Shown: positions 9,962-64,000 of the stretch, piece by piece
How the letters are laid out: each line of letters opens with the position of its first letter
How positions within the stretch are numbered: position 1 is the first letter of the stretch
Origin: Epithemia pelagica
Lineage: Eukaryota; Protista; Bacillariophyta
Assembly: GCA_946965045.2 (NCBI GenBank)
Contig: OX337233.1
Span: forward strand, 930,001-994,000
Reading direction: 5' to 3'
DNA: 64,000 nucleotides
Notes under the pieces: generated by a model
Told to the model about the DNA's origin: nothing
What the model saw: the letters and a program-made list of their open reading frames with translations, nothing else
Database searches by the model: none
Program-made: the position numbers and the translations under genes

Positions 9962-12900
9962 TCATTTGACACTAGTGCGGTGGTGAAAGCGAACCTTGTG
10001 TTCCAAGTGGTTGCATTCCGCAAAGAATTCGTCTGAGAGAGGGGATGGCAGTGCGCATCTTTGAATGGTTGTCCGAATATTGGTCAACAGATGGTTCCAT
10101 CGTGGACCTTTCTCTGTCCAGAAAGAAATGTCTTTGCTATGCAGCTCTTGGAACAACTCGCGAATGTATCGGATTATCTCCGGATCCACAGAAACTGCAT
10201 GCAGTTGATGGCCGTTCGGCAATGGAGAGGTCGACGCATACATGAGCGCCACAATACCCCGTCCGTAAGTGATGAAATTCGCATCCAAACGAAGAGTGCC
10301 AGGTATACGGCGGTCTTGAGCGGCCAATTGCTTCAGTTCTTTCAACAAACGCAAGGCATTGAATCCAGCCGACCGGGCAAATGGCGGCGAGCGAGCGGCC
10401 ACATCAGCATATGCCGTTATGACAGTTGTGTACGATATAACATCTGGATGGCATGCAAATCGATCCGACTGGGCATAGTTGAGCATTTGACGCAATCCAC
10501 GTTCCGCCATGGTCGCTTTGTTGGGATCCTTGGATCTCACCCAGGATTGAAGTACAACATTGAACTCAACGGTACTGGGAAAGGAATCCAATTCTCCTTG
10601 TTCTGTTTGAAAAATCCATTCTTGGAGTACTTGGGTCGTTCGTTGAGCGTTTCCAGCTTTCGACCAAGCGTTAAGTCTGGTGTTGAAAGCCTTGGCATGG
10701 GGCCTAAAGTCAACGTCGCCAGTTTGTTTCCAGGCTGTCACAAGTTCTTGAAACAGACGTTCGCATCGCTCAGGACACATGCGCTTGGACCACGCTGCCA
10801 TGAGTGTATTGTAAATGGGTACACTGGGAAGTTTTACGACATCTCCCATTTCTTTCATATTCGCAAGGTGCTGGTGAGCACTCTCCAATGCCATTGGATC
10901 CGACGATCTCGACAGGCCGTAACAAAGGGCATTCAACGTCATGGAGTTAGGTTGTGCGTGAGTATCCCCTTCTATTCTCCATTGATAGAGCATTTGTTGG
11001 TAAATGCGTTCCAATTGTGTCCCTAATTCCATTGCATCAGGTGAACGGGCCCAAGCCCACAAGAGGGATGTATAACAAACGGTGTTGGGCTTCATCCAAC
11101 CCAGAGGCCTCATGCAGTCGTCCAATACGGATGCGGCTTTTCTCCCTGCCTGAGGATGCCTTGATTTCGCCCATGCCTCGATCACAATGCTAAAATGCTT
11201 CTGATCGATCGAGGCCATGTCCATGTCACCACGTTTGACTTTGCTCAAAAAGTGTTCCAAAACTTCGTGACAACGTTCCGGATCACCAGCATTTTTCCAA
11301 GCCAGGAGTAGACCGATAAAGGTCTCGCCATCGGGTTGAAATCGCTGTTGAGTTTCCATCCATTGAAACAATTTCTCGGCCTTATGGGCGCCTTCCCTTG
11401 GAGAAGGTTCCTGAGCATAGCAAGCCAACAACGCGTTGTAGGATGAAGTGGTCACCAAACCTTCCCCGTTCTTGTCGGATCGCTTCACGCCTATTTCTTT
11501 CAGTCGATCAAGTAGCATGGAAATGCGATCTGCGGCTTGTGCATCACCGGATTGTGCCCAAGAGACCAAGACTCCATTCCAAGTTTGTGAGTTCAAATTT
11601 CCCTCAAGACTGTTTCCGCCTGAACCCTGTTCAATGTCCTCCATTAATTGCATCACAACTGCTTCTGCACCGGCAGTGTCCTTGGCTTGTGCGTAGGCCC
11701 AAATCAATGCAGAATGAACTACCAGGTCTGGCTTCAACGATACGTTCGTGACGGCCAATTGTTTCATGGAATCAAAGACATCTTGAGCTTCCTGAACCCG
11801 TCCAGCTCGTCCATATGCACTAATGACATCGGAAAAGCAATGAACCGTAGGTTGCAAGTAATGTTTCTCTTGCACATCGTGTTCTGCTTTTAGTGACTGC
11901 GAGACGAGTTCATCCAGTACCGCATGTGCGGCATCTGGAGCTTCTGGATGGCGACACAGAGCCAAGGCATGGCACACACGAGCATATACTTTGGTGTCCA
12001 ACTCGAACAAATGCCTTTGAGGGGTTTCCCCAGTTCCGATACGAGACTGGGTTCCACTGTCGCTGCCACTATTGGAGTCGGCCACATCAATATCCTTACT
12101 CATTTCTTTGAGTTCGGCAAAGAGTTCTTGAATCCGTTTCAATGCTGTTCCCGGAGGACTAGAATGGCTGTGTGCTTCCATGACAGCGCAATAAATGTTG
12201 GGAATGGGTTTCATCTCAATGGATTGGCGAGGATCACCTGGATACCAATCTTTGACCATTTGCAAGTACTGTTCGCATCGCAGCGCTGCATTGTTGTTCG
12301 TGTTGTGGTTTGTCCCCCTAGTACTTTGTGCCCAAAGTTCCACCACGCCATAGATTGTGGTCGCTGTAGGATGGCAAACCGATTGATTTCCTCGATGTAA
12401 CATGGATTGCAAAATTTCGTCTCCTAACAATGCCGCCTGGAGAGGGTTATCATTGACTTTGGAAAGAACATGCAAGATGACATTGTAAGGAGAGTCGCTG
12501 GAACGAAACAACCCCACATCCATGTACTGTTTCACACGGTTCAAAACCGATACTGGATTCAAGGGTCTATCAGAGCCTTGATCTTTTTTGGTGGGACCAG
12601 CGTTACTACTACGGCTGATAAGGTTTACCGTAGAAAAGAGAAAGTCTCTCCAACTCACAAGAACTGCCACCAAAATGCCTGAATCCAGAGGTAGCACCGC
12701 ATTCGTCACAATGCCCATATTGCGAGGATTCCTGGATGTCATGGTGGGTGATTGACTTATTTCTCGACCAAGGCGGTCCAATACCAGAAACATGGATTCG
12801 ATGCGTTGCTGGGGAGAAATATGGCCCTCCTTGACAAAGGCTGTATGATTGCGGAGGTTGGTGATCAACAACTCTGCTTCCATCCAGTGCTGCGATTTCA

Positions 12901-32122: not shown

Positions 32123-32765
32123 GGTACTTGATCCTCACTTTTCCTCTCATCGCAATCCTCGTCGTTCCTGAGTCACTTTCTCATTGATAAACATTATAAT
32201 TAAGTACTTAACCAACACTGGGGGGGTATAGGCCCCCCACCCATTAGGGAGGGATCCGGAATCGCGCCGCGCTGCCAGAACTCCAGATTCTGAACAGTAC
32301 GCGTCTGCTGTGGGCGAGCGTGTGTCCAAGAAGTGAGCCATCCTCCTTTTACTCACAAGTGAGTCTGTACTCTCGAAATCTCTTCGCAGTAATACAGTAG
32401 TCAGTTGCTGTGGAGTGCCACCCCCAAGCAACCAACTCGGAGAACAACCCCCTCATGTTCCACAGTCAAGCTGACAAACAATAAGCGACCTGGACATGCA
32501 CCACTAGGTAGTACAGTCGAGTCTTCACCGGGCGGGCGGGTGGGCGAAAGAAGAATGTAAAGAACCGAAGGGTGATCAAATCCAACGATGACCTTCTCAA
32601 ATCTTCTTTCCAACAATAATTTATGATTGCTGAAACTTTGTTGGGACAGTCTTACAAAGACCGTCCCAACACACTCTCTTCTTCCAGGAACTCCTTTGGG
32701 TGCGATGACTCGATCAGCGCTCGTCCGTCGGTCCCTTCTTGACCGGGGCGGTACGATGCGGCTAC
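32123..32765 (-). mobile_element. Solo A-linker-B repeat (relic) of a related tyrosine-recombinase retrotransposon
   Basis: The reverse strand aligns end to end with 62814-63483. Shared blocks: gcatcgtaccgcccc..ggtcaagaagggaccgacggacga, cttctttcgcccacccgcccgcccgg.gaagactcg, gcgcgattccggatccc, gggtggggggccta.acccccccagtgttggttaagta. Ends in GTACC. Confidence 0.88.
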
Positions 32766-32926
32766 TGAGCCTATTGAAATTCGCAGAGAACACAACCCCG
32801 CTTTCGTATCAAAACAAAAATTAAATATTGAATAAGAGACGAAATATATAAAACCGATGAGGTGTAGAGAGGTTTCTGACATTCCTTATGTTCGGCTTTC
32901 CACGCAATAGAATGGTGGACGATCCA

Positions 32927-49200: not shown

Positions 49201-52200
49201 AGTCGTTCGTTGCGGAGATCCAGGAGGCAAGTATCGGAAGAACACGAGGCGTTGGTAGCACCGTCGTCATCACCACCATCGACAAGAGAAACTTCCTCTT
49301 CGTCATCTTCCTCAACTGTCGGAGAGGACGAGGCTGATCACGAACCTGTCTTGGATCGTCAATTGATTCCTGGTATAGTGGCTCGTGATTTGTACAAGGT
49401 TTACGCCGGTAGCCACAAACGTTCCTCGTCATCCAACACTGTAACAGCCGCCGTCAATCATTTGGACTTGACCTTGTATGAGAATCAGATTACGACACTG
49501 TTGGGACACAATGGTATGTGTTACACCAGTACTGTAGTGGGAGGATTATATCTCTTGCTTTTGTTGTTGGCAGGTTGAGTTGCACCGGGATGGACCATCC
49601 CTCTTCGTGACGTTGCACTGTCTCACGGTGTCGTTTTATTCTCTTTGACAGGAGCCGGTAAAACTACAACCATTTCTCTTTTAACAGGTCTCTATCAACC
49701 AACGAGTGGTGACGCTACGATATACGGCCATTCCATTACGGACAATGTGGCGGCGGCCCGACAATCCATTGGTATTTGTCCCCAACAAAATGTCTTGTTT
49801 GATTCCTTGACTGTGCAGGAACACATTTTCTTTTTCCAAAGACTCAAAGGCCTTGTACCCAGCGCCGAGGGAGCCCGTCGTATGGCTCAAGATATTGGAT
49901 TGCAAGACTTTTTGCATGTGGCATCGAGCGCTTTGTCGGGAGGGAACAAGAGGAAACTTTGCGTTTTGGCAGCGCTTAGTGGGAACCCCAAATTCGTGGT
50001 GCTGGATGAGCCGACCAGTGGAATGGTAAGTCGTTGCTCCTTAAGCTTTTCCCACAGTGTTTGTTCCGACTATGGGACTGGACATGAGTCTCACCAGCTG
50101 CGTTCCTCGTTTGGTCGGTCTACCATTGCGCCTTTTTCACTCTTGTCTGTTTTTTGTTTCGCTTGGTTACTGCTCTCCTCGTTAGGACCCTGGTGCGCGC
50201 CGCAAAACCTGGGAAGTCCTTCGAAAACGCCGCCTTGGGCGATCGATCTTGTTGTGCACTCACTTTATGGATGAAGCAGAAATATTATCGGATCGCATTG
50301 CAATTCTTAAAGCGGGACAACTTCGGTGTTCTGGTTCGCCATTGTTTTTGAAGAAGCGATTTGGAGTTGGTTATAATTTGACAGCACTAATGGAACTCGG
50401 GAAACCTCAATCCCCTGTGTTAGATGGCCGTATTCTCGAGGAGGCAAAGGAGGACATTGAAGCTCAGGTAGTGCAAACTCCAAGTCCAGTGATCACGGGA
50501 CAATTGTCAATGGGACAGGCAGCCGAACAGCTACTTTCACTGGCACAGATACATGTACCGCGAGCGGAAATTGAAAGAATAGGCGGAAAGGAGATAACAA
50601 TTCGACTTCCTTCTGACAACGAAGCATCATTTCCGCAACTATTTGACGATCTGCAGACGCAAAGAAGTAATCTGTCTATTGGAGCATTGGGTGTTGAGAA
50701 TGCGTCTTTGGAGGAAGTATTCATTCAACTTGCCGATGAAGAAGCCAACGATACATCCGACAGTACCAACGATGAAGAAGAATGTCACGAAGTTGATCTC
50801 GCACACGCAATAGATTCGGATGAGAGGATCCAGACTTTGGCGACATCCCCAACAACATCTGCAGGCTTTGTAACGCAAATTGGGCTACTTTATTGGAAGC
50901 GTGTAGTCTGTCAGCGCCGCGATCTAAAGGGTCTTTTCTTTGCTGTGGTTGTGCCCGTTTTGTTGGTGGCCCTGGCACTCATCATCTTGACGATTACACC
51001 GCCCGTTGTGGGACCGCCGATTGAGCTGTCTCCGAATTTGTATTCATCGTCAAACGTGGGGAAATCAACCATGACGGATGTTATTGTAGGAGGAGGCATT
51101 TCAGCAAAGCGTCCCACTGACACTGAATCTACGTATAAAGATCTTCATGATTGGTCACTGGATACTTATGACCATCTCAACTTCGATCGACGACAGGAAG
51201 ATATTTCGTCTCATATGGTGTCACTGACACTTCTGGACAGCATCAATGCGCATGATCATTACGAGCGTTATGGAGCGTTGGCCTTGAAAGATAGGTTGAA
51301 CATCAGTATTACTGTTGACTGGTCCATTGTTTATGAAGAAATGAAATATCTTTTCCAGATTTGGAATGGTACCAGCACTAACAGCACTGACCCTGAACCT
51401 GTCGATATCACAGACTCAGTGAAGACATACTTGGCACCAACATTGCACAACATAGACAGTACGGAAGATGGTTTGTTGTTTCATTTTCAGTCAACACCAC
51501 AAGATTTTGATGGATTATGGAAAGTTCTCAAGTTTTCCCAATTGGTGAAAGGGAACGGCGATCCCTCAGCTAATTCAACCACAATGCACGTCGAATCTAT
51601 TGTGTTGTATGAGTCTGAAGGTATCCTCACTGTGTCGAACATGACGGTAAAAAGCGGTTCTTTGGTACTTGCAGACCACAAGACAGTGAACTTGTCCCTT
51701 TTCTCGGACCGGTCAGTGCCATCTGAAAGCATGGCGTACCATTTTCACGTTAATACTCAGACAACTATTCTTCACAATGCTTCTTCTGCGCATGCAGTGG
51801 CTGCGTACTACCAACACTACATGGAATTTCTTTTCAAGAAATGTACTGCCCAATCCTCAAGTCGGTTGGTGGCTGAGAACTACCCACTGCCTCTTACTAC
51901 GCAACAAAGTTTGGAGGTGAAAACTGTGCTCAGTGTTCTAGCATCGATGTTCATTCTCATCCCCTATTGCCTGATACCGGGGTTTTTTGTGGTTTACCTG
52001 GTGAAAGAGAAATCTTCCAAGTCTAAGCACTTGCAGCTTGTCAGTGGCACGGACTTGACGGCCTACTGGATCTCTAGTTATCTGTTCGACGTGTCAAGAT
52101 TCAGCATCTTGACAGTTCTTGTTATGCCTGTGTTTCTACTTTATGGGCAAGATTCTGCCCAGGTTTTTGTCGGTTCTCCGGAGGCTTTCCTATGCACGGC

Positions 52201-54014
52201 GTTGCTGACATTTGGATATGGATTAAGTGTACTTCCCTTTTCATACCTTTTGGCCAGAGGATTCTCGAATCACAGTTCTGCACAAATCGCTGTGATTAGC
52301 TTTGTTTTTCTTACCGGATTTGTTGCGGTGAACGCAATCTATGTCATGAGTTCGGTCGAGACGACTGAAGATCTAGCAGAATTCTTGCGTCCAGTGTTTC
52401 ATTTGTGGCCTCCTTTCAATGTTGGGAGCGGACTCATTGCTATGAGCGCCTCATTTTGGTCTCGTGAGATTTTGTTTCAAGAGACGTATCCCTTAGATTG
52501 GGACGTGGCTGGCAAGCATCTCGCCTTTTTGTACGGTTTGATATTGCCCTACTTTCTTCTCCTTCTATTTGTCGAATTTGCCCACGACGGTGGTGCCGGT
52601 GGCGTAGTTGGCAAGATGCTTCGTCGGCTTAACGAGAACGTGGTAAAGATGATTTTTCGATGTCTCTTTGGAGTTGAATGGACGCAAACAGATGACGGTC
52701 GGTATGTTGGTGAGGATAGAAGAGATACAGACGTGCTTGAAGAAGAGGCATTTGTCCGCGAGAACGGAGCGAGCCTACGAGAATCTACTCCAATCCTCTT
52801 CCAGAATCTATGGAAAATTTACTTACCATCTGTTGGTGTGCTCAGCTCAGGTTTTGATGCCTGTCGACGAGCTTGTTCGAGGCCTGACGGAACGGATGCG
52901 AGACATCGGTCACAGCCAAAACTTGCTGTTAGAGGAATGAGCACCGCTGTTGGACGAGGAGAAATATATGCTTTACTTGGAGCGAATGGGGCCGGTAAGT
53001 GTTGTTGGCGTATGTGGCAAGGGCTGTCTTTTCCCACCCCATTGATGCACATACTCATTGATGGGACATTTTCCCACTTCAGGCAAAAGCACAACATTGG
53101 GAATGCTTACGGGTGATGTCTCCCCAACTCGCGGCAATATCTACGTGGCTGGATATGATGCAACAAGCCGCGAAGATCTCAATGGGGTTACGCAAGCTCG
53201 TCAACATGTTGGTTTTTGTCCACAAGTAGATCCCTTGCTTGATCTCATGTCAGTTCGAGAAACATTAACGCTCTTTGGCCGCTTGAGGGGAATTGGTCCA
53301 GCTGACATCGACAGAGTTGTGGATCAATTACTTCATCGACTCCTGTTGACCCCTCACGTCAATAAGACGTGCGAAAGTTTGTCTGGAGGAAACAAACGAA
53401 AGGTTAGCCTAGGGATAGCGCTCATAGGAGAGCCAGAGGTGCTTCTTATTGACGAGAGTTCCTCTGGACTTGATCCCTTGGCAAAGCGCCGAATGTGGAA
53501 CCTCATTTCGGCTGTCTCCAAGGACAAGACAGTGGTTTTGACAACCCATAGTATGGAAGAAGCGGTAAGTTCATGTCAACGATTGACGCCCCACCGAACA
53601 GTGCATATCTTATTGCTTGCGTAACTCTGATAACAGGAGGCATTATGTACACGAGCTGGAATCATGGCAAAGGGACAACTGCTGTGTCTTGGCTCTGTTC
53701 AGCACCTGAAGACGAAGTACCTGGATGGCTACACAATCGACGTTTTCTGTTCCGCCAACTCTTCCAGCAGTGATTTGGATAATGTGGTGAACGACATTGT
53801 CCGTTCCACACTTCCTGGATCGACCTTGGCCGAGCGCCATGGAAGATTTCTTCGGTTTGACTTTTCCAATATGTCTTGTATCGGGCTTGGGACAACGTTT
53901 CGAAATTTGGAGACACTGAAACAGCAACCGGATAGCATTGTGGAGAGCTATTCCATCGCGCAGTGCTCTTTGGAACAAGTTTTTGTTCAGTTGTCTGATC
54001 GTGTTAGCGGGTAG
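46223..54014 (+). CDS. Full-size ABCA-subfamily ABC transporter, 6 exons (46223-48632, 48830-49513, 49652-50025, 50186-52994, 53083-53564, 53637-54014)
   Basis: Two TMD+NBD halves. Spliced Walker A GHNGAGKTT and GANGAGKSTT, signature LSGGNKRK twice, Walker B VVLDEPTSGMDP and LLIDESSSGLDP. All five GT-AG introns restore the frame. Confidence 0.93.
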
Positions 54015-54611
54015 TACTGGTCGGATTGCAGTCCAACCATTCTGAGGCCTTGCGGTTATGAAATTGATAGCCTGAATTATGGTCGGCCAAGAGAAGAGGA
54101 ACGGAGGCACCACATCTCGAGTTTCAATCGTCTCGTTTCCAGAATACTGCAGACAGTGTTCTCATGCCCTCTTCAGCATTCCATCTCTTTAGGTTGACAT
54201 GTCGTTGATCTCATTTGATACTGACTTTCAGTGGTGGAGTCTCTACTCTCTAGGTTCGCTTTTTCTAATTCTCGTGCAGCATTGCTTCTTCACCATGATT
54301 GCTAGCTTTGGTCTTCATTCCACAGGAGTATTTTTCATTTGCCACTTCGTTCAGGCTTTCTTTATGGAAGCTATGCCGATGCGCGGTCCAAGTCCAAAAG
54401 GACAACAACATCATAATTCAGTCACATGCGAGGGATTCAGATACAGCTCATCATCTCACTCTCAATTTCGTGTCTTTCCGCGATCGACCACCTGCACCGC
54501 CGACAAAGGTGACGTGGGATTGTCAGATGTCGTGCTCTTCAATCCGCAATCCGACGCAAGCTTGAGTCGTATTTGGCCGGATTGTTGTCCGCTGCAGGAG
54601 ACACAAACCAG

Positions 54612-54846
54612 GTACCGCATCGTACCGCCCCCGGTCAAGAAGGGACCGACGGACGAACGAGGAACGGACATTGCACCCAAAGAAGATCCCAAGAGGTTTG
54701 CAAGGCTACGTCGACGTTTGTTGGGATAGTCAGAATGACTACTCCCAACAAACAAACTTGGACGATTCATAAATCGTCAGAAAGAAGGGTTGAACGGGTC
54801 ACCAAGGATCTGATCACCCATTGGTTCTATGATTCTCTTCTTTCGC
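54612..54846 (+). repeat. Repeat A1 (235 bp)
   Basis: Matches 62814-63048 except for one A/G substitution. Confidence 0.95.
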
Positions 54847-54894
54847 TTCGGTTATCGCCTTGTCGACCGTGCCATCCACCTCATTCGTTCCACC

Positions 54895-57136
54895 ATGACG
54901 TTTGCGTGGGGAGGAACTCCGGATTCTTCCCCTTCTGTGGGGTCGTCAGGTGAGTCTGTGTCTGGTGATAGTGTGACCGGGGGGGGGGGGGGAGCCTTCG
55001 TTCGGGTTCTCTCTACGGTGTCGTTTGTTTCGACCAGTCTGTTTTCGAGTCTGTTTGTCGTGGGCTTGTCGGCGAAGGGCAGCGCATGTGTGTTCGTTCG
55101 GATTGTCAAGTGGCTTCGCATTCCCTCAAGAAGAATTCGTGGAGTTCGCTTGTGGGCGATGACACCTCCGCCATCTTTATTCGTGGTTCAAGTGGGACAT
55201 CGTCTTCCGATGCTTTGGGAACTGTTTTTTGCACTCCTGTTCTACCGGGACAGTGCGTGAGCGGCGTCGATTGGAATGAGATGGAACTCAGCCCGCGCAC
55301 TCTGGAAAGTTGGCAAGCATTGTTCACAGCTTTGCGGAAGGCTTCTTCCGCGTCGGGTGAAGGTGTGGATCCAACTACCGCCGCACAATTTATGGAGACC
55401 ACCAAGACAGAAGTGGATTTCACCATGACTCCACGTCCCAAGAAAAGATCGGTTCAAGTTGAAACTGTGATGGATGACGATGACAAGCATGGCCTTGTGA
55501 CTCCCAAGCTTCGACGGCGTGAAATCCCCTGGAAGGATGTGCCTACGGACATCAGCTCCCAAACTCCAACTCCAGCGGTGAAGATTCTGCAAGGCGGAGC
55601 ATGGAGCAACTTGGTAGAGAATGTAACCACTCTGCGTGACGATTTGGCTCGGGAGGTGGTTGATTGGCGTGTGTCCGAGGAGAATCAGGACAAACAGTTC
55701 GACAAGATGGAGTTGAAATTATCAGTGCTCCATGAGTTATTGGGCAAACGTCCTTCTTTCAGGTCCTCGATAGCTGCGTGTCGAATATGGCGTCGGTTGA
55801 GCAGTTAGTTATTGAACGACTGAATCAGAAGGCGGCGCCATCTGCAAGAGACGATTCCGCAATCGAGGGGAAGTTGGCGGCCTTGGAAACTTGTGTTGGT
55901 TTATTGGCGGGTCAGTTCAAGGGACTTGTGCAAAAGGAATTGGAGTCTTTTCTCGCTGACACCACTACTGATTTCCGAGTTCAATTCGTCGATCCGACTT
56001 TGACGCTCCTGTCGCGCTCATCGAGATCTCCTTCAGATCCTGGAGGTAAATGGTCTGAAGCTTTGCACCAATTGCAACAGCGTTTGTTTAACTTGGAACA
56101 AGCACAAGCAGCATCAACAAGCAGCGGAGTCTCCATGGGCAACGGTTCGGTAGGAGGTGGAAACATCGGAGGAAACGTGGACCTGTCAAAGATGCAAGAG
56201 GAAATGAACAACATGCAGACGATGTTGAAGAACCTGAAGGAACAGGTGGACGCTGACTCGGTAACGATTGGATCCATCGTGTTTACGTCACGGGCCTTTT
56301 GTGTAACTTGGATGGAGTTGCCTCACGCTACTGCCGATCCTCATGTTTTCGTGGATGCTATCTCATTGCTTTCGTTGGCTACCTCTGATGCTAGCCCCGA
56401 CGAAGAACGAGCTGCCAATCAACGCGCGACAACAGCCAAGGTCAGGGACAAGACGCCGTATCACACGGCGTACATCGCGTCCTTCAATCTTGAAGTCCCT
56501 CCAATGTTGGGCAAAGGTTCAGACCAATCAACGACGACAAATTTACGAGCGCTTGGAGCAGTCCCAAGATTTGCGGACTTTCACCCACCCTCCGGACGCG
56601 AGGGCATCCACCAGCGTATTTTGGATTATGTGAAGGACGGGGTCAATACAATAGAACAAGCAGTGGGTGAGCTCTTTGCGTTTGGAACTGAGCCATCGAG
56701 TGTGGCTAAGGAACTCCTCTTGTGGAGCAAGACTTTTTGGGATGAACTTACCCATTGGATGGTAAGATATCATGCCCAAGTCCAAGCGGAAAGTGAGGCG
56801 AGTGAACAAGAGGTGTGGATATTGATATCCCACTGTGTGCGCGCGGTCTTTAAGAGCTTGAGGGAAGCTCGGGCATCTGGACGGGCATCCAACACCCCGG
56901 GTGGAATGCTCTGGGGAACATTGAAGGCGCATCGAGTCATGAAGGAGTACCGGGCAGCAGACTTTAGCGGCCATCCAAAGATTGCACTCATTCTCCATGA
57001 GCATCTTATTCGCTTTACGACGCCTCGGTCAAAGTTTGATACGCTCCAAATGAGTTTGAACGATCGATTGGACAAGATGCAACGTGCTGTGAATCAGGCA
57101 GTGTCCTCAGCAAACAAGACGACGAAGAAATCTTGA
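54895..57136 (+). pseudogene. gag-like ORF1 of the YR element, broken by two frameshifts (G14 run at 54979-54992; second shift within 55736-55805)
   Basis: MTFAWGG... start, then in the next frame a Cys/His motif (CRGLVGEGQRMCVRSDCQVASH), then in a third frame coiled-coil and conserved-looking C-terminal blocks up to TGA at 57136. Confidence 0.7.
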
Positions 57137-57139
57137 GAG

Positions 57140-60100
57140 ATGGAGAAAAGTGACCGCAACAGTCGTAAAACTACGAAAAGAAAGACAACTACAAGCGAAG
57201 CTTTGGAGACTCGAGAAAACAAAGCGCAAAGACTAGCGAGCCAAGACACTAAAGATTATTCTAGGATACATGCACCAGCTGCAAATTCAAACGATGGTGT
57301 CGCCGAACGGATGGTTTCGAAGTTGTCCGTAGGTAAAGGAAAATGGCGAGTCGGTTTGGTGAGCACGAGCACCCCTTTTTGGTTTTGGGCGGTGTCTTCG
57401 CTTGGAGATGTTGTTTGGATCGATGTGTTGGAGAAGGATTTGATACAGGAAGAAACAGGGGCGATGGATTGGAGAAGCAAGGCTCTGGATTTACAAGAGA
57501 GACAAACCAAGAATCGAGGACTCAAGCGTCGCAGAATCGCTTACGTGTCGCCAGCAGATTGGGAAACAAGGGAACCAGTGGACGTCATTTTCTTTGAGAA
57601 GGGAATAATACCAGGTCCTGGTCACGAGGTTTGGTTGCGGCACGATGTGAAACTTGTGTTTTGGATTGGAGGAAGGAAGAAGGGAGGACCATCTTCGACG
57701 GTCCAAGGAGTCTGGATACAAGGTATCATGAAATTGGATCACACTGCTTTGGGTGTTGTTACTGATCTGGAATCGTGGATACATGTAGCGGAGAGAAAGG
57801 GTTTGGATGAGAGGAGATTTGTAGATTGTTGGGCGGATCACCTGGAACAAGGACTCAAGCATACGACTTTTCGAGGTGTTATAGACCCGACAATTCAAGG
57901 CAAGGAATGTCCGTTGAGTATGTTTAGGGACGATACTGAAGACAGCTTGTCAAAACGTGGGGTCTCAATACTGGAAAGAAAGTTGGTTTGGAAGAAGGAT
58001 TTGGGAAGGTTGCATGTCTTGCCCAGCGTCTATGCGACGAGATCAGGATTTGTGGAGCGAAAAATTGCACCAAGCGAACTTGCGGTGGCGCTGGATTTCC
58101 CAGCGGCGTTGCACAAGAAAGGTTCGGATCAAGAGCTAGACCGATGGACTTCCGAGATCGGAGTCCCGTTCAAGAGCAGGGTGCAGGTTGCAAGGTCGAT
58201 TCTGGGCTGGACGAATGAGAAGGACGAGGTCTCTAGGGGGCAGCAGCGAATTGAAAATGAAGAAGTGGCCATGGGAGTCGCTCCAACACCGGTAACGCGA
58301 ATGACAGAGGATTGTAATTTGTTTACTGCTCTTGACAGCGAAGGTGGCGGATCGTTGAACATGGAGGAGAGAAGAGAGGATCGGAACCTCAAAGCGACTA
58401 AATCCGATGATGCAGAGATACCAACGTATCTTTGGGACGATCGCATTTGTTCTCACTTTGAGATGACAAGTGTTGCTGACCGATTCCGGTGCATTGAGGC
58501 GCTGAATGTAATCCGTCGACTAGCCTTGAGATATTGGAAGCGAAGAGTCTGCAGTGATTTTTGGAGTTGGTGGAGACAGCAACGATTTCGCGACGACAAC
58601 GATGAGAGAGAAAGAACCAAGAGAGCTGGTCTGAGTGCACTCAACCATGCGTTGCTGGCGTCATGGTGGGACTGGGACCACGGTTCTTCACCATTCTTTT
58701 GGCGAATGCCAAAGCTCGATTGGATGGTGGAAATGCGGGATGGTCTGGATCCGATGTGGATCGGTGAGCCACCAGCGTATAGAAGGAGACAACGGGCGAA
58801 TCCGGACCCAGAGGCTCGGTCGTTCGAAAAGAAGAAGCTGACAAAAGTTAGGCACCGAGGGTACATTGTGAAGACGGCTGATATAAAATCACTAACCAGT
58901 TTCTTCTCAGTGCCGAAAGGTGACTCAGACATTCGGATGGTATACGATGGTACAAAAAGTGGGCTAAACGACGCTTTGTTCGCTCCTTGGTTTGGACTCG
59001 GAAATGTCACTTCGATGTTGAGAACAGTGGAGCCAAAGACGTGGTCCGCTGACAATGACTTCGGAGAGATGTTCCTCAACTTTTGGATCCACCCGGATCT
59101 TCGGCAATACACGGGCATTGATATTACCGAGTTGTTTCCCGAGGAGTTGCAGGAGAAGTTTGGATCAACGAGGATTTGGGAGGCCTGGTGCCGATGCGCC
59201 ATGGGTCTGACGACTTCACCTTACCAAACTACCCAATGTGCACAGAGAGTGAAGCGAATCATATTTGGCGACAAGTCGGATCCGGACAACATTTTTGGTT
59301 GGACGGACGTACGAATCAATCTTCCAGGAGATGAGCATTATGATCCGTCACTTCCATGGATCAGTAAAGTGAGAGCAAATGGGGACATAGCAGCAGATGT
59401 GCATCCATACGTCGACGACTTACGTGAAACTGCACCATCTGAGGAGGAAGCATGGCTGGCGGCCAGCAGAATGGCCAAAGGTGCTTCCTATTTCGGATTG
59501 CAGGATGCCGCGAGAAAACGGCGTCCACCAAGCAAAGCACCTGGTGCATGGGCAGGAGCAGTTGTGGAATCGTCGAACGAGGGGAAGGTTTATAAGACCG
59601 TATCCCAAGAGAGATGGAATAAGACGCGAAAGTTGGTTGGGGTCTTGAAGGATTGGGCTGACGACGGTGGATTGGTGGATCGAAAGGAGTTGGAAAGGAT
59701 CCGAGGATTTCTGGTCTATGTTTCTTTCACATTTGACGTCATAGTCCCTTATTTGAAAGGGATCCACTTGACGTTGGAATCATGGAGAGACGACAGAGAC
59801 GTGGAAGGATGGCGTTTGAAGGAAAAGGACCGCAGGGCTGTGGTTCGGAAAAGAGAAAGGGAAATGCACGCACCAGGAAAAGTGAAACAGGCTCCTCGCT
59901 TTAAAGACGATGTATACACTTTGCATAGGCTGACAGATTCGGAACATCCGCCAAAAATTTTGGCAAGACCGACGTCGGGAGCGAGTGTCGCAATGATCTT
60001 TGCAGATGCATCAGGTGAGGGGTTTGGATCTTCCTTATGGCTCTATGGAGAGGCATCGGTAGAAACAGAGCATGGATTGTGGACGCGAGAATATGGTTCT

Positions 60101-60934
60101 CGCTCGTCCAATTTTCGTGAATTGTACAACCTGGTGTTGCGATTGGAGGGACTGGTAAAAGATAAGAAGTTGCCCATGGGAACTGAAGTGTTCATGTTCA
60201 CGGACAACTCGACGGCTGAGTCAGCTTTTTATAAAGGGACGTCGAGGTCGAGATTGCTATTCAAGCTGGTCTTGAGAACAAAACAACTGGAAATGAATGG
60301 ACACATATTTGTCAGGGTGATTTGGGTGGCCGGAACCAGAATGATAGAACAAGGCACCGACGGTCTTTCCCGAGGAGACCTCATGACAGGAGTCATGACA
60401 GGAGTGAACATGTTGCTGTATGTTCCCTTGAACAAGTCGGTTGTTGAACGGCAGGACAATGTCATTCCTTGGTTAGAGTCTGTGGGAAACACAGCATACA
60501 AGTGGAGGACCTTGACAACACACAAATGGTTTGATGAGGCGTTTGAAGAGGGGGAGTTTATATGGACACCACCACCAGCCATTGCTGATGTAGCTGTTGA
60601 CTTACTTTGTGATGCGCGCCACATCCGCACGAGAACTGCCCACATGTTCGTCTACCCTGCCCTCATGACAAATAGATGGAGAAAGAAACTAGGAAAGGTG
60701 GCGGATTTTGTTTTCACCATCCCCGTAGGAACTGAACTTTGGCCAAAATCTCATCACGAACCGTTGATTGTTGCTTTTGTTTGTCCGTTCCTTTACAGAA
60801 CTCCATGGCAAGTCAAGCGTGCCACAGGCTTATTGGACGAAGTGGAAGGGGAACTGTCAAGCATGTGGGCATCCGGTCCAACCGCTGTGCGGGATTTGCT
60901 GCGCAAACTTTGGGCATTCAAGGGGAACGAGTAA
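57140..60934 (+). CDS. YR-retrotransposon pol: N-terminal extension + reverse transcriptase + RNase H + methyltransferase-like tail
   Basis: RT motifs FFSVPKGDSDIRMVYD, DNDFGEMFLNF, MGLTTSPY, YVDD; RNase H FADASG, SSNFREL, FTDNS, DGLSRG. Confidence 0.92.
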   Translation: MEKSDRNSRKTTKRKTTTSEALETRENKAQRLASQDTKDYSRIHAPAANSNDGVAERMVSKLSVGKGKWRVGLVSTSTPFWFWAVSSLGDVVWIDVLEKDLIQEETGAMDWRSKALDLQERQTKNRGLKRRRIAYVSPADWETREPVDVIFFEKGIIPGPGHEVWLRHDVKLVFWIGGRKKGGPSSTVQGVWIQGIMKLDHTALGVVTDLESWIHVAERKGLDERRFVDCWADHLEQGLKHTTFRGVIDPTIQGKECPLSMFRDDTEDSLSKRGVSILERKLVWKKDLGRLHVLPSVYATRSGFVERKIAPSELAVALDFPAALHKKGSDQELDRWTSEIGVPFKSRVQVARSILGWTNEKDEVSRGQQRIENEEVAMGVAPTPVTRMTEDCNLFTALDSEGGGSLNMEERREDRNLKATKSDDAEIPTYLWDDRICSHFEMTSVADRFRCIEALNVIRRLALRYWKRRVCSDFWSWWRQQRFRDDNDERERTKRAGLSALNHALLASWWDWDHGSSPFFWRMPKLDWMVEMRDGLDPMWIGEPPAYRRRQRANPDPEARSFEKKKLTKVRHRGYIVKTADIKSLTSFFSVPKGDSDIRMVYDGTKSGLNDALFAPWFGLGNVTSMLRTVEPKTWSADNDFGEMFLNFWIHPDLRQYTGIDITELFPEELQEKFGSTRIWEAWCRCAMGLTTSPYQTTQCAQRVKRIIFGDKSDPDNIFGWTDVRINLPGDEHYDPSLPWISKVRANGDIAADVHPYVDDLRETAPSEEEAWLAASRMAKGASYFGLQDAARKRRPPSKAPGAWAGAVVESSNEGKVYKTVSQERWNKTRKLVGVLKDWADDGGLVDRKELERIRGFLVYVSFTFDVIVPYLKGIHLTLESWRDDRDVEGWRLKEKDRRAVVRKREREMHAPGKVKQAPRFKDDVYTLHRLTDSEHPPKILARPTSGASVAMIFADASGEGFGSSLWLYGEASVETEHGLWTREYGSRSSNFRELYNLVLRLEGLVKDKKLPMGTEVFMFTDNSTAESAFYKGTSRSRLLFKLVLRTKQLEMNGHIFVRVIWVAGTRMIEQGTDGLSRGDLMTGVMTGVNMLLYVPLNKSVVERQDNVIPWLESVGNTAYKWRTLTTHKWFDEAFEEGEFIWTPPPAIADVAVDLLCDARHIRTRTAHMFVYPALMTNRWRKKLGKVADFVFTIPVGTELWPKSHHEPLIVAFVCPFLYRTPWQVKRATGLLDEVEGELSSMWASGPTAVRDLLRKLWAFKGNE

Positions 60935-62321
60935 AACATGCATGGGTATTTGGCATGCCGGATGCTATCGACAGCATACTACAGACAAGTTCCCAGTACT
61001 GCAAGCTTCAGATTTGGATGATGCTTTGATCGATTTGGAAGGGCACGGGGAGCTTGATGATGATGCGAACCGTTTCAAGGAGGCACGACCAGGCGATGAT
61101 CTCATGGTCGCTTTTGAATGTGACGATTGTTGCTTTTACAACTTGCAAGGACGATATCCCACGACAAGAGAGGAAGACAAGCTATTGTTGTTGTGTATCC
61201 GCCGGGCCATCCTGGATTCTTTTTGGGCAAGAGAAAGGACAACGGTCGAGAAGAATCGTAGGGAAATCAAGAGTCTGGTGGAAACAAGCGCGACAATGGG
61301 ACTCGACGCGCCGTTGCCAAATCGAGGTCCATTCCAAGTAGGGGGAGACAATGGGTTGAAGGTAGCTTGCATGATGTTGATGAAAACAATGCGCGCTGGA
61401 CGAAACTCAACTCATATCCAATTTGAAACCGCCCGAAAAGTGAGATCTGCGGTCTCGAACTTCTTCCATACACTTCCTGGAGGAACCGGATTGGCGACTG
61501 TGGGACAAGGAGAAAGAGGTGGCCTGTTTTTCAGCGCGAGTACAACCAACTCCCATTGGTTTCGTCGCTTTATGACTGGGTGTCATCGCCGAATGGGGGA
61601 TGTTTGGATCCCAGATCAAGCCGTGACCGTAGATGAGGTCAAGGCGGCGTTGTCAATTCTGGAAGATGAATGGACGAATGGAGCAACGGGTCAGCGAAGA
61701 GTTGAACTTGCGTTGACTGGGGCAATGGTTGTTGTTGGATACGTTGCGGCGTTGAGGGGCGAGGAATTACCGCAGATTGACGTGGGCCTGATGCGCAAAT
61801 ATTGGGAAGAGGGCTTGAATTATTCACGCAAGCCACATGTGCCTCTTGCTTTGGCGGGCCGTTTTAAGCAGACCACGGGCACTTTCCGAATCTATATGCA
61901 CCCCTTGGCGGACAGAACTTCTTCTGGCATTGATGTTCGTCTTTGGACGGAAAGGGCGATCCGTTGCCTGCACCAACAGGGGATTACGAGCGGTCCGATG
62001 TTTCGCATAACAAGAAAGAAGGGACAAATTGCTCGTGCGACGGTCGGTGATCTGGATTCGCTCTTTCATCCGCTTTGGAAGCGGGTTCAGCATCGCTTCC
62101 CGGGGTTGATTGGCGACTACAGTGTTCGGCGATCTTTCAGGCGCGGCGCCACTACGGAAGCTCAAAACAGAAGAATTCCAAGAGAAGTCATTGAGATGAA
62201 CAACCGCTGGAGAAAACACATCAAGGGAAGAGGCGTCCTTCCATCCATGAGCATGTTGGAAAGATACTCGGACGCAAAAGCCTCAGTGGAGGCGTTGGTC
62301 AGGTTTTCCGAGCTTCTGTAA
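60768..62321 (+). CDS. Tyrosine recombinase of the retrotransposon (overlaps the pol 3' end)
   Basis: LRGEE (Arg), RSFRRGATT, RW and RYS (Tyr) catalytic-type motifs. Overlapping-frame layout typical of the DIRS order; exact start uncertain. Confidence 0.88.
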   Translation: MLLLFVRSFTELHGKSSVPQAYWTKWKGNCQACGHPVQPLCGICCANFGHSRGTSKTCMGIWHAGCYRQHTTDKFPVLQASDLDDALIDLEGHGELDDDANRFKEARPGDDLMVAFECDDCCFYNLQGRYPTTREEDKLLLLCIRRAILDSFWARERTTVEKNRREIKSLVETSATMGLDAPLPNRGPFQVGGDNGLKVACMMLMKTMRAGRNSTHIQFETARKVRSAVSNFFHTLPGGTGLATVGQGERGGLFFSASTTNSHWFRRFMTGCHRRMGDVWIPDQAVTVDEVKAALSILEDEWTNGATGQRRVELALTGAMVVVGYVAALRGEELPQIDVGLMRKYWEEGLNYSRKPHVPLALAGRFKQTTGTFRIYMHPLADRTSSGIDVRLWTERAIRCLHQQGITSGPMFRITRKKGQIARATVGDLDSLFHPLWKRVQHRFPGLIGDYSVRRSFRRGATTEAQNRRIPREVIEMNNRWRKHIKGRGVLPSMSMLERYSDAKASVEALVRFSELL

Positions 62322-62403
62322 CTTTGAGATCGACGATCAGGAAAAAGAATGAAAGAAGTATGAGTGGTAAAAGAGGAGGAACGAAGATGGAACGACCACA
62401 CGG

Positions 62404-62818
62404 GGAGAAGACTCGGCTATACCTCTTACGGGGACAGCCTAGGTCGCTTGTGTCTGTCAGCTTGTCTGTTTGATGGGATGGGGATTCCTCTCCTGGTTGG
62501 TATGTCGAGGTGTGGCAACCTTGACATGCTGACTATCCATTTCTTGCGATGATGATTTCGAAGATTTGGGCTCACTATGTGAGTAAATGGAGGGGGGTCT
62601 CTAACCTAGATACACACTCGCACGCAGTCAACACGGATAGCAGATTCTGGAGATCTGCGACCGTGGCGCGATTCCGGATCCCCCCCGAAAATGGGATATG
62701 GGTGGGGGGCCTAAACCCCCCCAGTGTTGGTTAAGTAATATCTTAATACTATATTATGTGAACAAGGACGAATGGGATTGATTGGTGCACGTGTCGTGAC
62801 GAATGAGGATGAAGTACC
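62404..62818 (+). repeat. Repeat B1 (415 bp)
   Basis: Matches 63063-63483 apart from a 5-bp duplication, one extra C and one substitution. Confidence 0.95.
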
Positions 62819-63048
62819 GCATCGTACCGCCCCCGGTCAAGAAGGGACCGACGGACGAACGAGGAACGGACATTGCACCCAAAGAAGATCCCAAGAGGTT
62901 TGCAAGGCTACGTCGACGTTTGTTGGGATAGTCAGAATGACTACTCCCAACAAACAAACTTGGACGATTCATAAATCGTCAGAAAGAAGGGTTGAACGGG
63001 TCACCAAGGATCTGATCACCCATTGGTTCTGTGATTCTCTTCTTTCGC
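62814..63048 (+). repeat. Repeat A2 (235 bp)
   Basis: Copy of A1; shares GTACC with the end of B1; followed by the 14-bp linker ccacccgcccgccc. Confidence 0.95.
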
Positions 63049-63062
63049 CCACCCGCCCGCCC

Positions 63063-63483
63063 GGAGAAGACTCGGCTATACCTCTTACGGGGACAGCCTA
63101 GGTCGCTTGTGTCTGTCAGCTTGTCTGTTTGATGGGATGGGGATTCCTCTCCTTGTTGGTATGTCGAGGTGTGGCAACCTTGACATGCTGACTATCCATT
63201 TCTTGCGATGATGATTTCGAAGATTTGGGCTCACTATGTTATGTGAGTAAATGGAGGGGGGTCTCTAACCTAGATACACACTCGCACGCAGTCAACACGG
63301 ATAGCAGATTCTGGAGATCTGCGACCGTGGCGCGATTCCGGATCCCCCCCGAAAATGGGATATGGGTGGGGGGCCTAAACCCCCCCCAGTGTTGGTTAAG
63401 TAATATCTTAATACTATATTATGTGAACAAGGACGAATGGGATTGATTGGTGCACGTGTCGTGACGAATGAGGATGAAGTACC
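63063..63483 (+). repeat. Repeat B2 (421 bp)
   Basis: Copy of B1, ending in GTACC at the element boundary. Confidence 0.95.
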
Positions 63484-64000
63484 CAAAGTCAACACCAGAC
63501 ATATGTATTGTTAAGTGAATTCGGGATGAATGCCTTGTCCTTTCTGTGTCACATTGCGATCTTTCTGGTTGTATATACTGCGAAAACAGGAACTTGCATC
63601 CGAGAAAGAGATGCCCGTCAGATCCATGACGTCACATTGCTTTCGTCATCTGCCAGATTCCGAACATGTACACAACTTTCTATAGTAAACCAGACCACAT
63701 CTTTCAGTCGCTCCACATCGTCCATGGCTGACGTCAACAACATCAAAAGTTGCCACCTTTTGCACCAAGATCCAATTACGAAACTCTGGCTCTCATTTTC
63801 TGATCTCACAATCGAAATTGACAACAAAGTTTGCAATCAGAAACCAAGTCGACACAAGGCCGACCCCTTCATTTTTTGATACTAAAGACACACAAGGTTC
63901 ATACTTCCGATTCGAATCATGTCGCCTCAAAACGTAACAGAACCCGAGCTCAGCAAGGAAGAAATCCAAGACGAAGATAGCAGCTATGGCAAGCAAACCG

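What the first reader, a model, noticed from the sequence alone, without database searches (positions are those of the whole stretch)
54612..63483. Near-intact diatom tyrosine-recombinase retrotransposon with split direct repeats and a GTACC crossover core
Seen: A1(235)-gag-pol-YR-B1(415)-A2(235)-14-bp linker-B2(421), with repeats differing at only a few positions, so the insertion is recent. GTACC occurs at the left end (cag|GTACC|gcatc), the internal B1/A2 junction (gaa|GTACC|gcatc) and the right end (gaa|GTACC|caaag). There is no classical TSD; the inferred empty site is ccagGTACCcaaag. Established: PAT/Ngaro elements have this layout and integrate circular cDNA via YR. Inference: a 5-bp-core, sequence-specific integrating retroelement from a lineage that, to my knowledge, is little described in diatoms. 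It is a candidate site-specific integration system.
Basis: partly seen in the sequence, partly recalled or inferred. Interest (0 to 1): 0.8.

Follow-up and report, generated by a model that had tools for sequence, protein, structure and literature searches.

The report
Diatom recombinase retrotransposon; GTACC core not general
This is a real, young 8.9-kb jumping gene that copies itself through RNA and inserts with a Cre-like recombinase. The proposed 5-letter GTACC target is peculiar to this copy: its relatives need only a C or CC, so it is an ordinary member of a known kind, not a site-specific integration system.

Summary
A1 (54612-54846), gag, pol, recombinase ORF, B1 (62404-62818), A2 (62814-63048), a 14-nt linker and B2 (63063-63483) are all there. 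The repeats differ by 2 substitutions and 2 indels. GTACC sits at the left end, at the B1/A2 junction and at the right end.

Pfam sees nothing, but predicted folds show a retroviral-type RT-RNase H and a two-domain Cre-like tyrosine recombinase. The element is therefore a split-direct-repeat retrotransposon of the DIRS order (PAT/Ngaro layout).

I read 22 independent left ends of the family in this genome:
- the base before GCATC is C in 22/22;
- CC occurs in 16/22;
- full GTACC occurs only in this copy, which chance alone allows (P about 0.23).

The shared core is C/CC, with weak extra preferences (C at -3, purine at -5).

This copy's gag changes frame twice. The scan has already reported this family on other DNA of this genome, with CC, ACC and 1-nt cores. 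A short junction/target identity is also a published inference for DIRS elements.

Verdict: new member of a known kind, modest interest.

The parts
54612..54846 (+). A1, left split direct repeat (235 nt). Its first 5 nt, GTACC, match the B end. In other copies only the last 1-2 of these (C/CC, here 54615-54616) are shared with the junction.
54895..57136 (+). gag-like gene, homologous to single 725-785 aa ORFs of relatives. Here it lies in three frames: a change inside a 14-G run (54979-54992) and another near 55745-55755. It ends with UGA at 57134-57136, in frame with pol.
57140..60934 (+). pol ORF (1264 aa, open). N-terminal ~540 aa are of unknown function. RT-RNase H is residues 540-1100 (58757-60439; YVDD, DASG/TDNS/DGLSR motifs). 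The C-terminal ~175 aa domain has only a weak Dam-methyltransferase-like lead.
60768..62321 (+). Tyrosine recombinase ORF (517 aa from TTG; 459 aa from the first Met). It has a Cys/His-rich N-terminus followed by a two-domain Cre-like fold. It overlaps the end of pol by 167 nt in another frame.
62404..62818 (+). B1 repeat (415 nt), ending ...GAGGATGAAGTACC
62814..63048 (+). A2 repeat (235 nt). B1|A2 is the internal copy of the joined ends (GTACC|GCATCGTACC...). The first ~45 nt of A are nearly invariant across subfamilies.
63049..63062 (+). C-rich 14-nt linker between A2 and B2. A similar C-rich linker occurs in a distant subfamily and in Epithemia elements.
63063..63483 (+). B2 repeat (421 nt), right end of the element, ending GTACC and followed directly by host DNA

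Best explanation
This is a young copy of a split-direct-repeat tyrosine-recombinase retrotransposon (DIRS order, PAT/Ngaro layout). It belongs to a large, sequence-diverged family of diatoms.

Shown:
- the repeat layout;
- a retroviral-type RT-RNase H fold and a Cre-like two-domain recombinase fold;
- about 25 related elements in this genome;
- ends that are exact to the base and carry no target duplication.

Inferred mechanism:
1. The RNA is reverse-transcribed.
2. The internal B1|A2 junction serves as the template that rejoins the ends into ...GTACC|GCATC...
3. The recombinase exchanges strands between that junction and the chromosome at a fixed point, at the CC just before GCATC.

The target needs a C (22/22), usually CC (16/22), with weak preferences for C at -3 and a purine at -5. 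GTA is the tail of B and stays at the right end.

In this copy the target happened to read GTACC, so the identity looks like 5 bp. As assembled, gag is broken, so this copy probably needs gag supplied in trans by sister copies.
For: - Layout and junctions.
- Recombinase: the model (pLDDT 73) matches Cre. Foldseek E 3e-5; VIA Z 14.6 over residues 56-426.
- Recombinase motifs LRGEE, GRFK, RRSxRRG, NRW and ERY are conserved in 25 homologues.
- RT-RNase H: the model (pLDDT 80.6) matches CaMV, foamy virus, MLV and HIV RT at E 1e-14 to 1e-12.
- Family size: the motif GCATCGTACCGCCCC occurs 48 times in the genome against 0-2 for the control.
- Every internal junction reads (G)(T/A)ACC|GCA.C. There are 22 left ends and 16 right ends, giving 11 left/right pairs without duplication.
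- Statistics: -1 C 22/22; -2 C 16/22 (p 2e-6); -3 C 11/22 (p 0.007); -5 purine 19/22 (p 4e-4).
- Derivatives expected of such elements are present: a solo A-B, A-int-B forms and a B-A-B-A-B tandem.
- Published model: a short identity shared by the circle junction and the target, inferred for DIRS elements (PMC7192593, citing Poulter and Goodwin).
Against: - No empty allele of this locus exists in the assembly or in metagenome contigs.
- No circle junction or recombinase activity has been observed.
- The size of the staggered cut is unknown. An identity of 1-2 nt is far less than the 6-8 bp overlap of classical tyrosine recombinases.
- Pfam and PDB sequence searches fail for every ORF, so the domain calls rest on predicted folds and motifs.
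- About 13 motif sites in the genome could not be read.
- One Epithemia left end has T, not C, at -1. That copy is old and the position is a CpG.
Confidence: 0.85

Rival explanations
1. One reading: integration is sequence-specific for a 5-bp GTACC core shared by circle junction and target.
For: This copy shows GTACC at all three places. G at -5 and CC at -2/-1 are enriched in targets.
Against: Only 1 of 22 left ends has GTACC. A at -3 (4/22) and T at -4 (5/22) are at chance. The probability of at least one GTACC among 16 CC sites by chance is 0.23. A second apparent GTACC left end (C3:3462503) is an internal junction split by a TA-flanked inverted-repeat transposon.
Confidence: 0.04
2. Homology-tolerant staggered cleavage, as in conjugative-transposon integrases (Tn916 or CTnDOT type; from my own knowledge). 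A 5-7 bp overlap needs identity only next to one cut, and the rest forms heteroduplex that replication or repair later resolves.
For: Identity is limited to 1-2 nt next to a fixed point. The recombinase has a classical two-domain fold, which normally makes staggered cuts.
Against: The reciprocal class that heteroduplex segregation predicts was not seen. All 16 readable right ends keep GTACC, and every left end keeps GCATC. Two further B ends without GTACC are masked by nested insertions, one proven and one inferred from its sequence. This rival predicts the same empty site as the main model, so it cannot be separated from it here.
Confidence: 0.15
3. Single-strand route: a single-stranded cDNA (as found for DIRS-1, PMC7192593) is recombined by one strand exchange at the C/CC and finished by replication, as integron integrases do (the integron comparison is from my own knowledge).
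For: One fixed crossover point with minimal identity. The first ~45 nt of A are nearly invariant across subfamilies whose repeats are otherwise about 70% alike. That pattern would fit a structured recognition site.
Against: There is no direct evidence. No inverted repeat or hairpin was found at the junction. The conserved block could equally serve priming, transcription or double-strand binding.
Confidence: 0.1
4. Insertion is not done by the recombinase. Linear cDNA is joined to a chromosome break by host end joining with microhomology.
For: Only 1-2 nt of identity are seen, as in microhomology joins.
Against: Both ends are exact to the base in 22/22 and 16/16 copies, with no truncation, filler or deletion. 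The shared base is always C at the same element position. The recombinase ORF is conserved across genera.
Confidence: 0.03

Closest known systems
Ngaro elements (DIRS order), e.g. those of the stramenopile Cafeteria burkhardae (PMC8547959)
   Same: A1-[gag, RT/RNase H, recombinase]-B1A2B2 layout. Solo A-B remnants occur. No DDE integrase and no target duplication.
   Different: Cafeteria Ngaros are 6-7 kb and their RT, RNase H and recombinase reach Pfam families. Here the element is 8.9 kb and no ORF reaches Pfam (RVT_1 E 0.05 at best). Pol has a ~540 aa N-terminal extension and a ~175 aa domain after RNase H, and the recombinase has a Cys/His-rich N-terminus. Phylogenetic placement was not tested.
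PAT-like elements (PAT, Kangaroo)
   Same: Split direct repeats, the same gene order, and a domain after RNase H in pol (a methyltransferase in PAT/DIRS; PMC6681497).
   Different: The methyltransferase nature of the C-terminal domain here is only a language-model lead: a Dam-family cluster at score 0.88, with no Pfam hit. No phylogeny was done.
DIRS-1 of Dictyostelium
   Same: A recombinase-bearing retroelement whose internal sequence restores the joined ends. A short junction/target identity (a trinucleotide) has been proposed for it (PMC7192593).
   Different: DIRS-1 has inverted terminal repeats and an internal complementary region. This element has direct split repeats and no inverted repeats.
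Crypton DNA transposons (CryptonS is known in oomycetes and Phaeodactylum; PMC3212892)
   Same: A eukaryotic tyrosine recombinase. Insertion occurs through a short identity (4-6 bp direct repeats at the termini).
   Different: Cryptons have no RT, no gag and no long split repeats.

Membership tests
DIRS order (tyrosine-recombinase retrotransposons) | Reverse transcriptase with RNase H of the LTR-retroelement type | tested here: met
   The model of pol 540-1100 matches CaMV, foamy virus, MLV and HIV RT(-RNase H) at E 1e-14 to 1e-12 over about 540-650 columns. YVDD, DASG, TDNS and DGLSR motifs are conserved. Pfam RVT_1 reaches only E 0.05.
DIRS order (tyrosine-recombinase retrotransposons) | A tyrosine recombinase in place of a DDE integrase | tested here: met
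   Cre is the top structural match (Z 14.6). R...K...RxxR-like...W...Y motifs are conserved. No integrase family was found in any ORF.
DIRS order (tyrosine-recombinase retrotransposons) | No target-site duplication | tested here: met
   11 left/right flank pairs share only the 1-5 nt that are also in the junction.
Ngaro / PAT-like (split-direct-repeat groups) | A1-internal-B1A2B2 repeats with gene order gag, RT/RNase H, recombinase | tested here: met
Ngaro | No methyltransferase domain; RT/RNase H falls in the Ngaro clade | tested here: inconclusive
   A conserved ~175 aa domain follows RNase H. It has a Dam-like lead only and no Pfam hit. No phylogeny was done, because no reference sequences were within reach.
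PAT-like | Methyltransferase domain after RNase H; RT/RNase H groups with PAT/DIRS | tested here: inconclusive
   Same evidence as for Ngaro.
DIRS1-like | Inverted terminal repeats plus an internal complementary region | tested here: not met
   No inverted repeats of 40 nt or more in 53500-64000.
VIPER-like | Recombinase gene upstream of RT/RNase H | tested here: not met
   The recombinase ORF lies downstream of pol.
   Right ends 16/16, but left ends only 1/22.

The most novel reading that the evidence does not exclude
The diatom family may be a separate, deep superfamily-level lineage of recombinase retrotransposons. Its RT and recombinase are invisible to Pfam. Pol carries a long N-terminal extension and a possible methyltransferase-like tail, and the recombinase carries a zinc-finger-like N-terminus. 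Its recombinase would work at one fixed phosphodiester with only a C/CC of identity, possibly by a single strand exchange on single-stranded cDNA.
Probability: 0.15. Interest if true: 0.6.

Novelty: new member of a known kind. Interest (0 to 1): 0.3.

Why it matters
The locus is a clean, young example of a poorly annotated but very abundant class of diatom mobile elements. Hundreds to thousands of relatives in diatom genomes and plankton metagenomes are all labelled 'hypothetical'. The family-wide tally corrects an attractive over-reading: the element does not offer a defined 5-bp landing site. Its recombinase appears to accept almost any site with a C or CC, so it is of little use as a programmable integration tool. 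It does bear on how eukaryotic tyrosine recombinases manage with so little identity.

Tried and rejected
- Pfam scans of all ORFs, sub-regions and 25 pol homologues found nothing above threshold.
- PDB sequence and profile searches for pol and the recombinase found nothing relevant.
- Search for an empty allele: both flanks are single-copy in the genome. The predicted empty site has 0 matches in metagenome contigs.
- The invariant 27-nt A motif has 0 matches in metagenome contigs.
About 13 motif sites stay unread.
- The Atlas structure library was not available.
- Does the right flank resemble the start of A (pseudo-site idea)? It matches 3.4 of 15 positions against 3.7 expected, so rejected.
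- Is identity beyond CC favoured? Not significant.
- The apparent second GTACC left end at C3:3462503 was rejected. It is a B1|A2 junction split by a ~2.2-kb element with inverted ends and a TA duplication.
- Metagenome contigs L097 and L098 have identical ends (120-132 nt). I read this as assembly collapse of the repeats, not as evidence of circles.
- No RT/recombinase phylogeny against DIRS, PAT, Ngaro and VIPER, because no reference sequences could be obtained with these tools.
- The host organism was not identified. 'Diatom' rests on the homologue sources: Epithemia clementina, Pseudo-nitzschia multiseries and MMETSP.

Full report
**Observation.**
The repeat finder gives two 235-nt A copies (54612-54846 and 62814-63048). 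It gives two B copies (62404-62818 and 63063-63483) in three collinear pieces, and no inverted repeats. A1 and A2 differ by one substitution. B1 and B2 differ by one substitution, a 5-nt indel and a 1-nt indel.

Reading the junctions:
- left: ...aaaccag|GTACC|gcatcg
- internal: ...gatgaa|GTACC|gcatcg, with B1 and A2 overlapping by these 5 nt
- right: ...gatgaa|GTACC|caaagt
- a 14-nt C-rich linker lies between A2 and B2.

**Coding content.**
Three + strand reading units fill the interior. None reaches a Pfam family. The best result is RVT_1 at E 0.05 around a YVDD motif. PDB sequence searches are empty.

Word searches found many homologues:
- 134 recombinase-ORF homologues;
- more than 1000 pol homologues;
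- all unannotated.

Their sources are Epithemia clementina, Pseudo-nitzschia multiseries, an MMETSP transcript and many metagenomes.

The recombinase ORF was folded with a 25-sequence alignment (pLDDT 73). Its best structural matches are Cre, Xer, Tn1549 and lambda integrases. Foldseek gives E 3e-5. VIA-align gives Z 14.6 over residues 56-426, covering both domains. Conserved LRGEE, GRFK, RRSxRRG, NRW and ERY motifs fit the Arg-Lys-(His)xxArg-Trp-Tyr pattern. Which residue stands in for the first His is not settled.

Pol residues 540-1100 (pLDDT 80.6) match CaMV, foamy virus, MLV and HIV RT-RNase H at E 1e-14 to 1e-12.

The last ~175 residues of pol have only a language-model lead to a Dam-methyltransferase cluster. 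I treat that as untested.

Gag is a single 725-785 aa ORF in relatives. Here it aligns in three frames. One change lies inside a 14-G run at 54979-54992, which could be an assembly error. The other lies near 55745-55755 and is not in a homopolymer. Gag ends with a UGA that is in frame with pol.

**Family and ends.**
The A repeat has at least 41 matches in the window's own 60.5-Mb genome. The motif that opens A occurs 48 times against 0-2 for the control, so there are about 25 elements in several subfamilies.

From the loci fetched I read every A start and B end.
- All internal B1|A2 junctions read GTACC|GCATC. A distant subfamily and Epithemia read GAACC|GCA.C.
- All 16 readable right ends keep GTACC, followed by unrelated DNA.
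- Among 22 independent left ends, the five bases before GCATC match GTACC by 1 nt (6 copies), 2 nt (13), 3 nt (1), 4 nt (1) and 5 nt (this copy alone).

A second apparent 5-nt case, at C3:3462503, is not a left end. It is an internal junction split by a ~2.2-kb element with inverted ends and a TA duplication.

Statistics:

| Position | Base | Count | p |
|---|---|---|---|
| -1 | C | 22/22 | - |
| -2 | C | 16/22 | 2e-6 |
| -3 | C | 11/22 | 0.007 |
| -3 | A | 4/22 | chance |
| -4 | T | 5/22 | chance |
| -5 | purine | 19/22 | 4e-4 |

The chance that at least one of 16 CC sites reads GTACC is 0.23. Right flanks show no resemblance to the start of A, with 3.4 of 15 matches against 3.7 expected. Eleven left/right pairs show no duplication.

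**Reading.**
The crossover sits at a fixed point, the C/CC just before GCATC. GTA is simply the end of B and therefore stays at the right end. In this copy the target happened to carry GTA before CC. The 5-bp 'core' is thus a property of this insertion, not of the family.

What remains supported is the general mechanism:
- the internal B1|A2 junction is a copy of the joined ends;
- insertion is exact and leaves no duplication;
- the element encodes a conserved Cre-like enzyme.

A short identity shared by the circle junction and the target has already been inferred for DIRS elements (PMC7192593, citing Poulter and Goodwin). The A1-[ORFs]-B1A2B2 layout with solo A-B remnants is described for Ngaro elements of the stramenopile Cafeteria (PMC8547959). 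DIRS-order elements are listed in TE tables of Phaeodactylum (PMC5859163) and of Fragilariopsis (bioRxiv 10.1101/2025.04.02.646770).

How a tyrosine recombinase works with 1-2 nt of identity is open. A staggered cut with tolerated heterology and a single-strand exchange on single-stranded cDNA are both possible. Both predict the same empty site as the simple model. The reciprocal junction class expected from heteroduplex segregation was not seen.

**Classification.**
The element meets the defining features of the DIRS order and of the split-direct-repeat groups.
- It fails DIRS1-like: no inverted repeats.
- It fails VIPER-like: the gene order differs.
- Ngaro against PAT-like is undecided. That turns on the unproven methyltransferase-like tail and on a phylogeny I could not run.

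**Limits.**
- There is no empty allele for this locus.
- The host is called a diatom only from the sources of the homologues.
- The ENA contigs reached through protein look-ups belong to the same organism, because the flank of L093 is identical to C3:3471631. Only the Epithemia loci are from another genus.

**Earlier scan notes.**
Earlier notes of this scan on other DNA of this genome describe the same family with CC, ACC and 1-nt cores. My tallies agree with them and were made independently on the sequences.

Noticed in passing
window 32123-32766 (- strand): A solo A-linker-B remnant of another subfamily of the same family, about 71% identical to A2-B2 of this element. It is flanked by TAGCC|GCATC on the left and GTACC|tggaaag on the right. 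It is the equivalent of a solo LTR.
   Followed up: partly
window 57134-57136: Gag ends with UGA, followed in the same frame by the pol ORF. This is a candidate stop-codon readthrough. The recombinase ORF has no in-frame ATG before its conserved Cys-rich N-terminus and overlaps pol by 167 nt in another frame, so how it is expressed is open.
   Followed up: no
window 54979-54992: A run of 14 G inside gag, exactly where the reading frame changes relative to intact relatives. It may be a homopolymer-length error of the assembly or a real slippage-prone site.
   Followed up: partly
window 62819-62863 and the same block in 12 other junctions (L002, L007, L009, L012, L096, L095 ...): The first ~45 nt of A (GCATCGTACCGCC..GGTCAAGAAGGGACCGACGGACGAACG) are almost invariant across subfamilies whose repeats are otherwise about 70% alike, and are partly kept in Epithemia. 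This is a strongly constrained cis element that begins exactly at the crossover point. GTACC occurs twice in it, 10 nt apart.
   Followed up: partly
window 63049-63062; L096:12057-12071; L095:12293-12312; L099 about 11900-11917: The linker between A2 and B2 is a C-rich tract (CCCACCCGCCC-like) in distant subfamilies and in another genus. Its function is unknown.
   Followed up: no
G000:C3:3462508-3464704 (L019, L040): A ~2.2-kb element with inverted ends (CCGTAATTTT...AAAATTACGG) and a TA duplication sits exactly in the B1|A2 junction of a family member. At C3:3461223 another B end is followed by GCATC plus a hairpin-like sequence instead of GTACC; this one is unexplained.
   Followed up: partly
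G000:C7:2682186-2690569, C7:3695087-3703074, C5:3633092-3634756: Structural variants of the family. Two copies have A-internal-B only, with no A2-B2. One copy has an extra A-B unit (B-A-B-A-B). Both fit recombination between the repeats.
   Followed up: no
window 50249-54014 (+): The host gene upstream is an ABCA-type transporter; its C-terminal R1_ABCA1 domain is at 53664-54011 (E 4.5e-8). The element lies about 600 bp past its stop, so no coding sequence is visibly interrupted.
   Followed up: partly
window 60768-61100 (recombinase ORF N-terminus): A conserved Cys/His-rich region (C..C....C.GAWH..C and FQCD.CHF.N) precedes the Cre-like domains in all homologues. It is a possible zinc-binding DNA- or chromatin-targeting module.
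   Followed up: no
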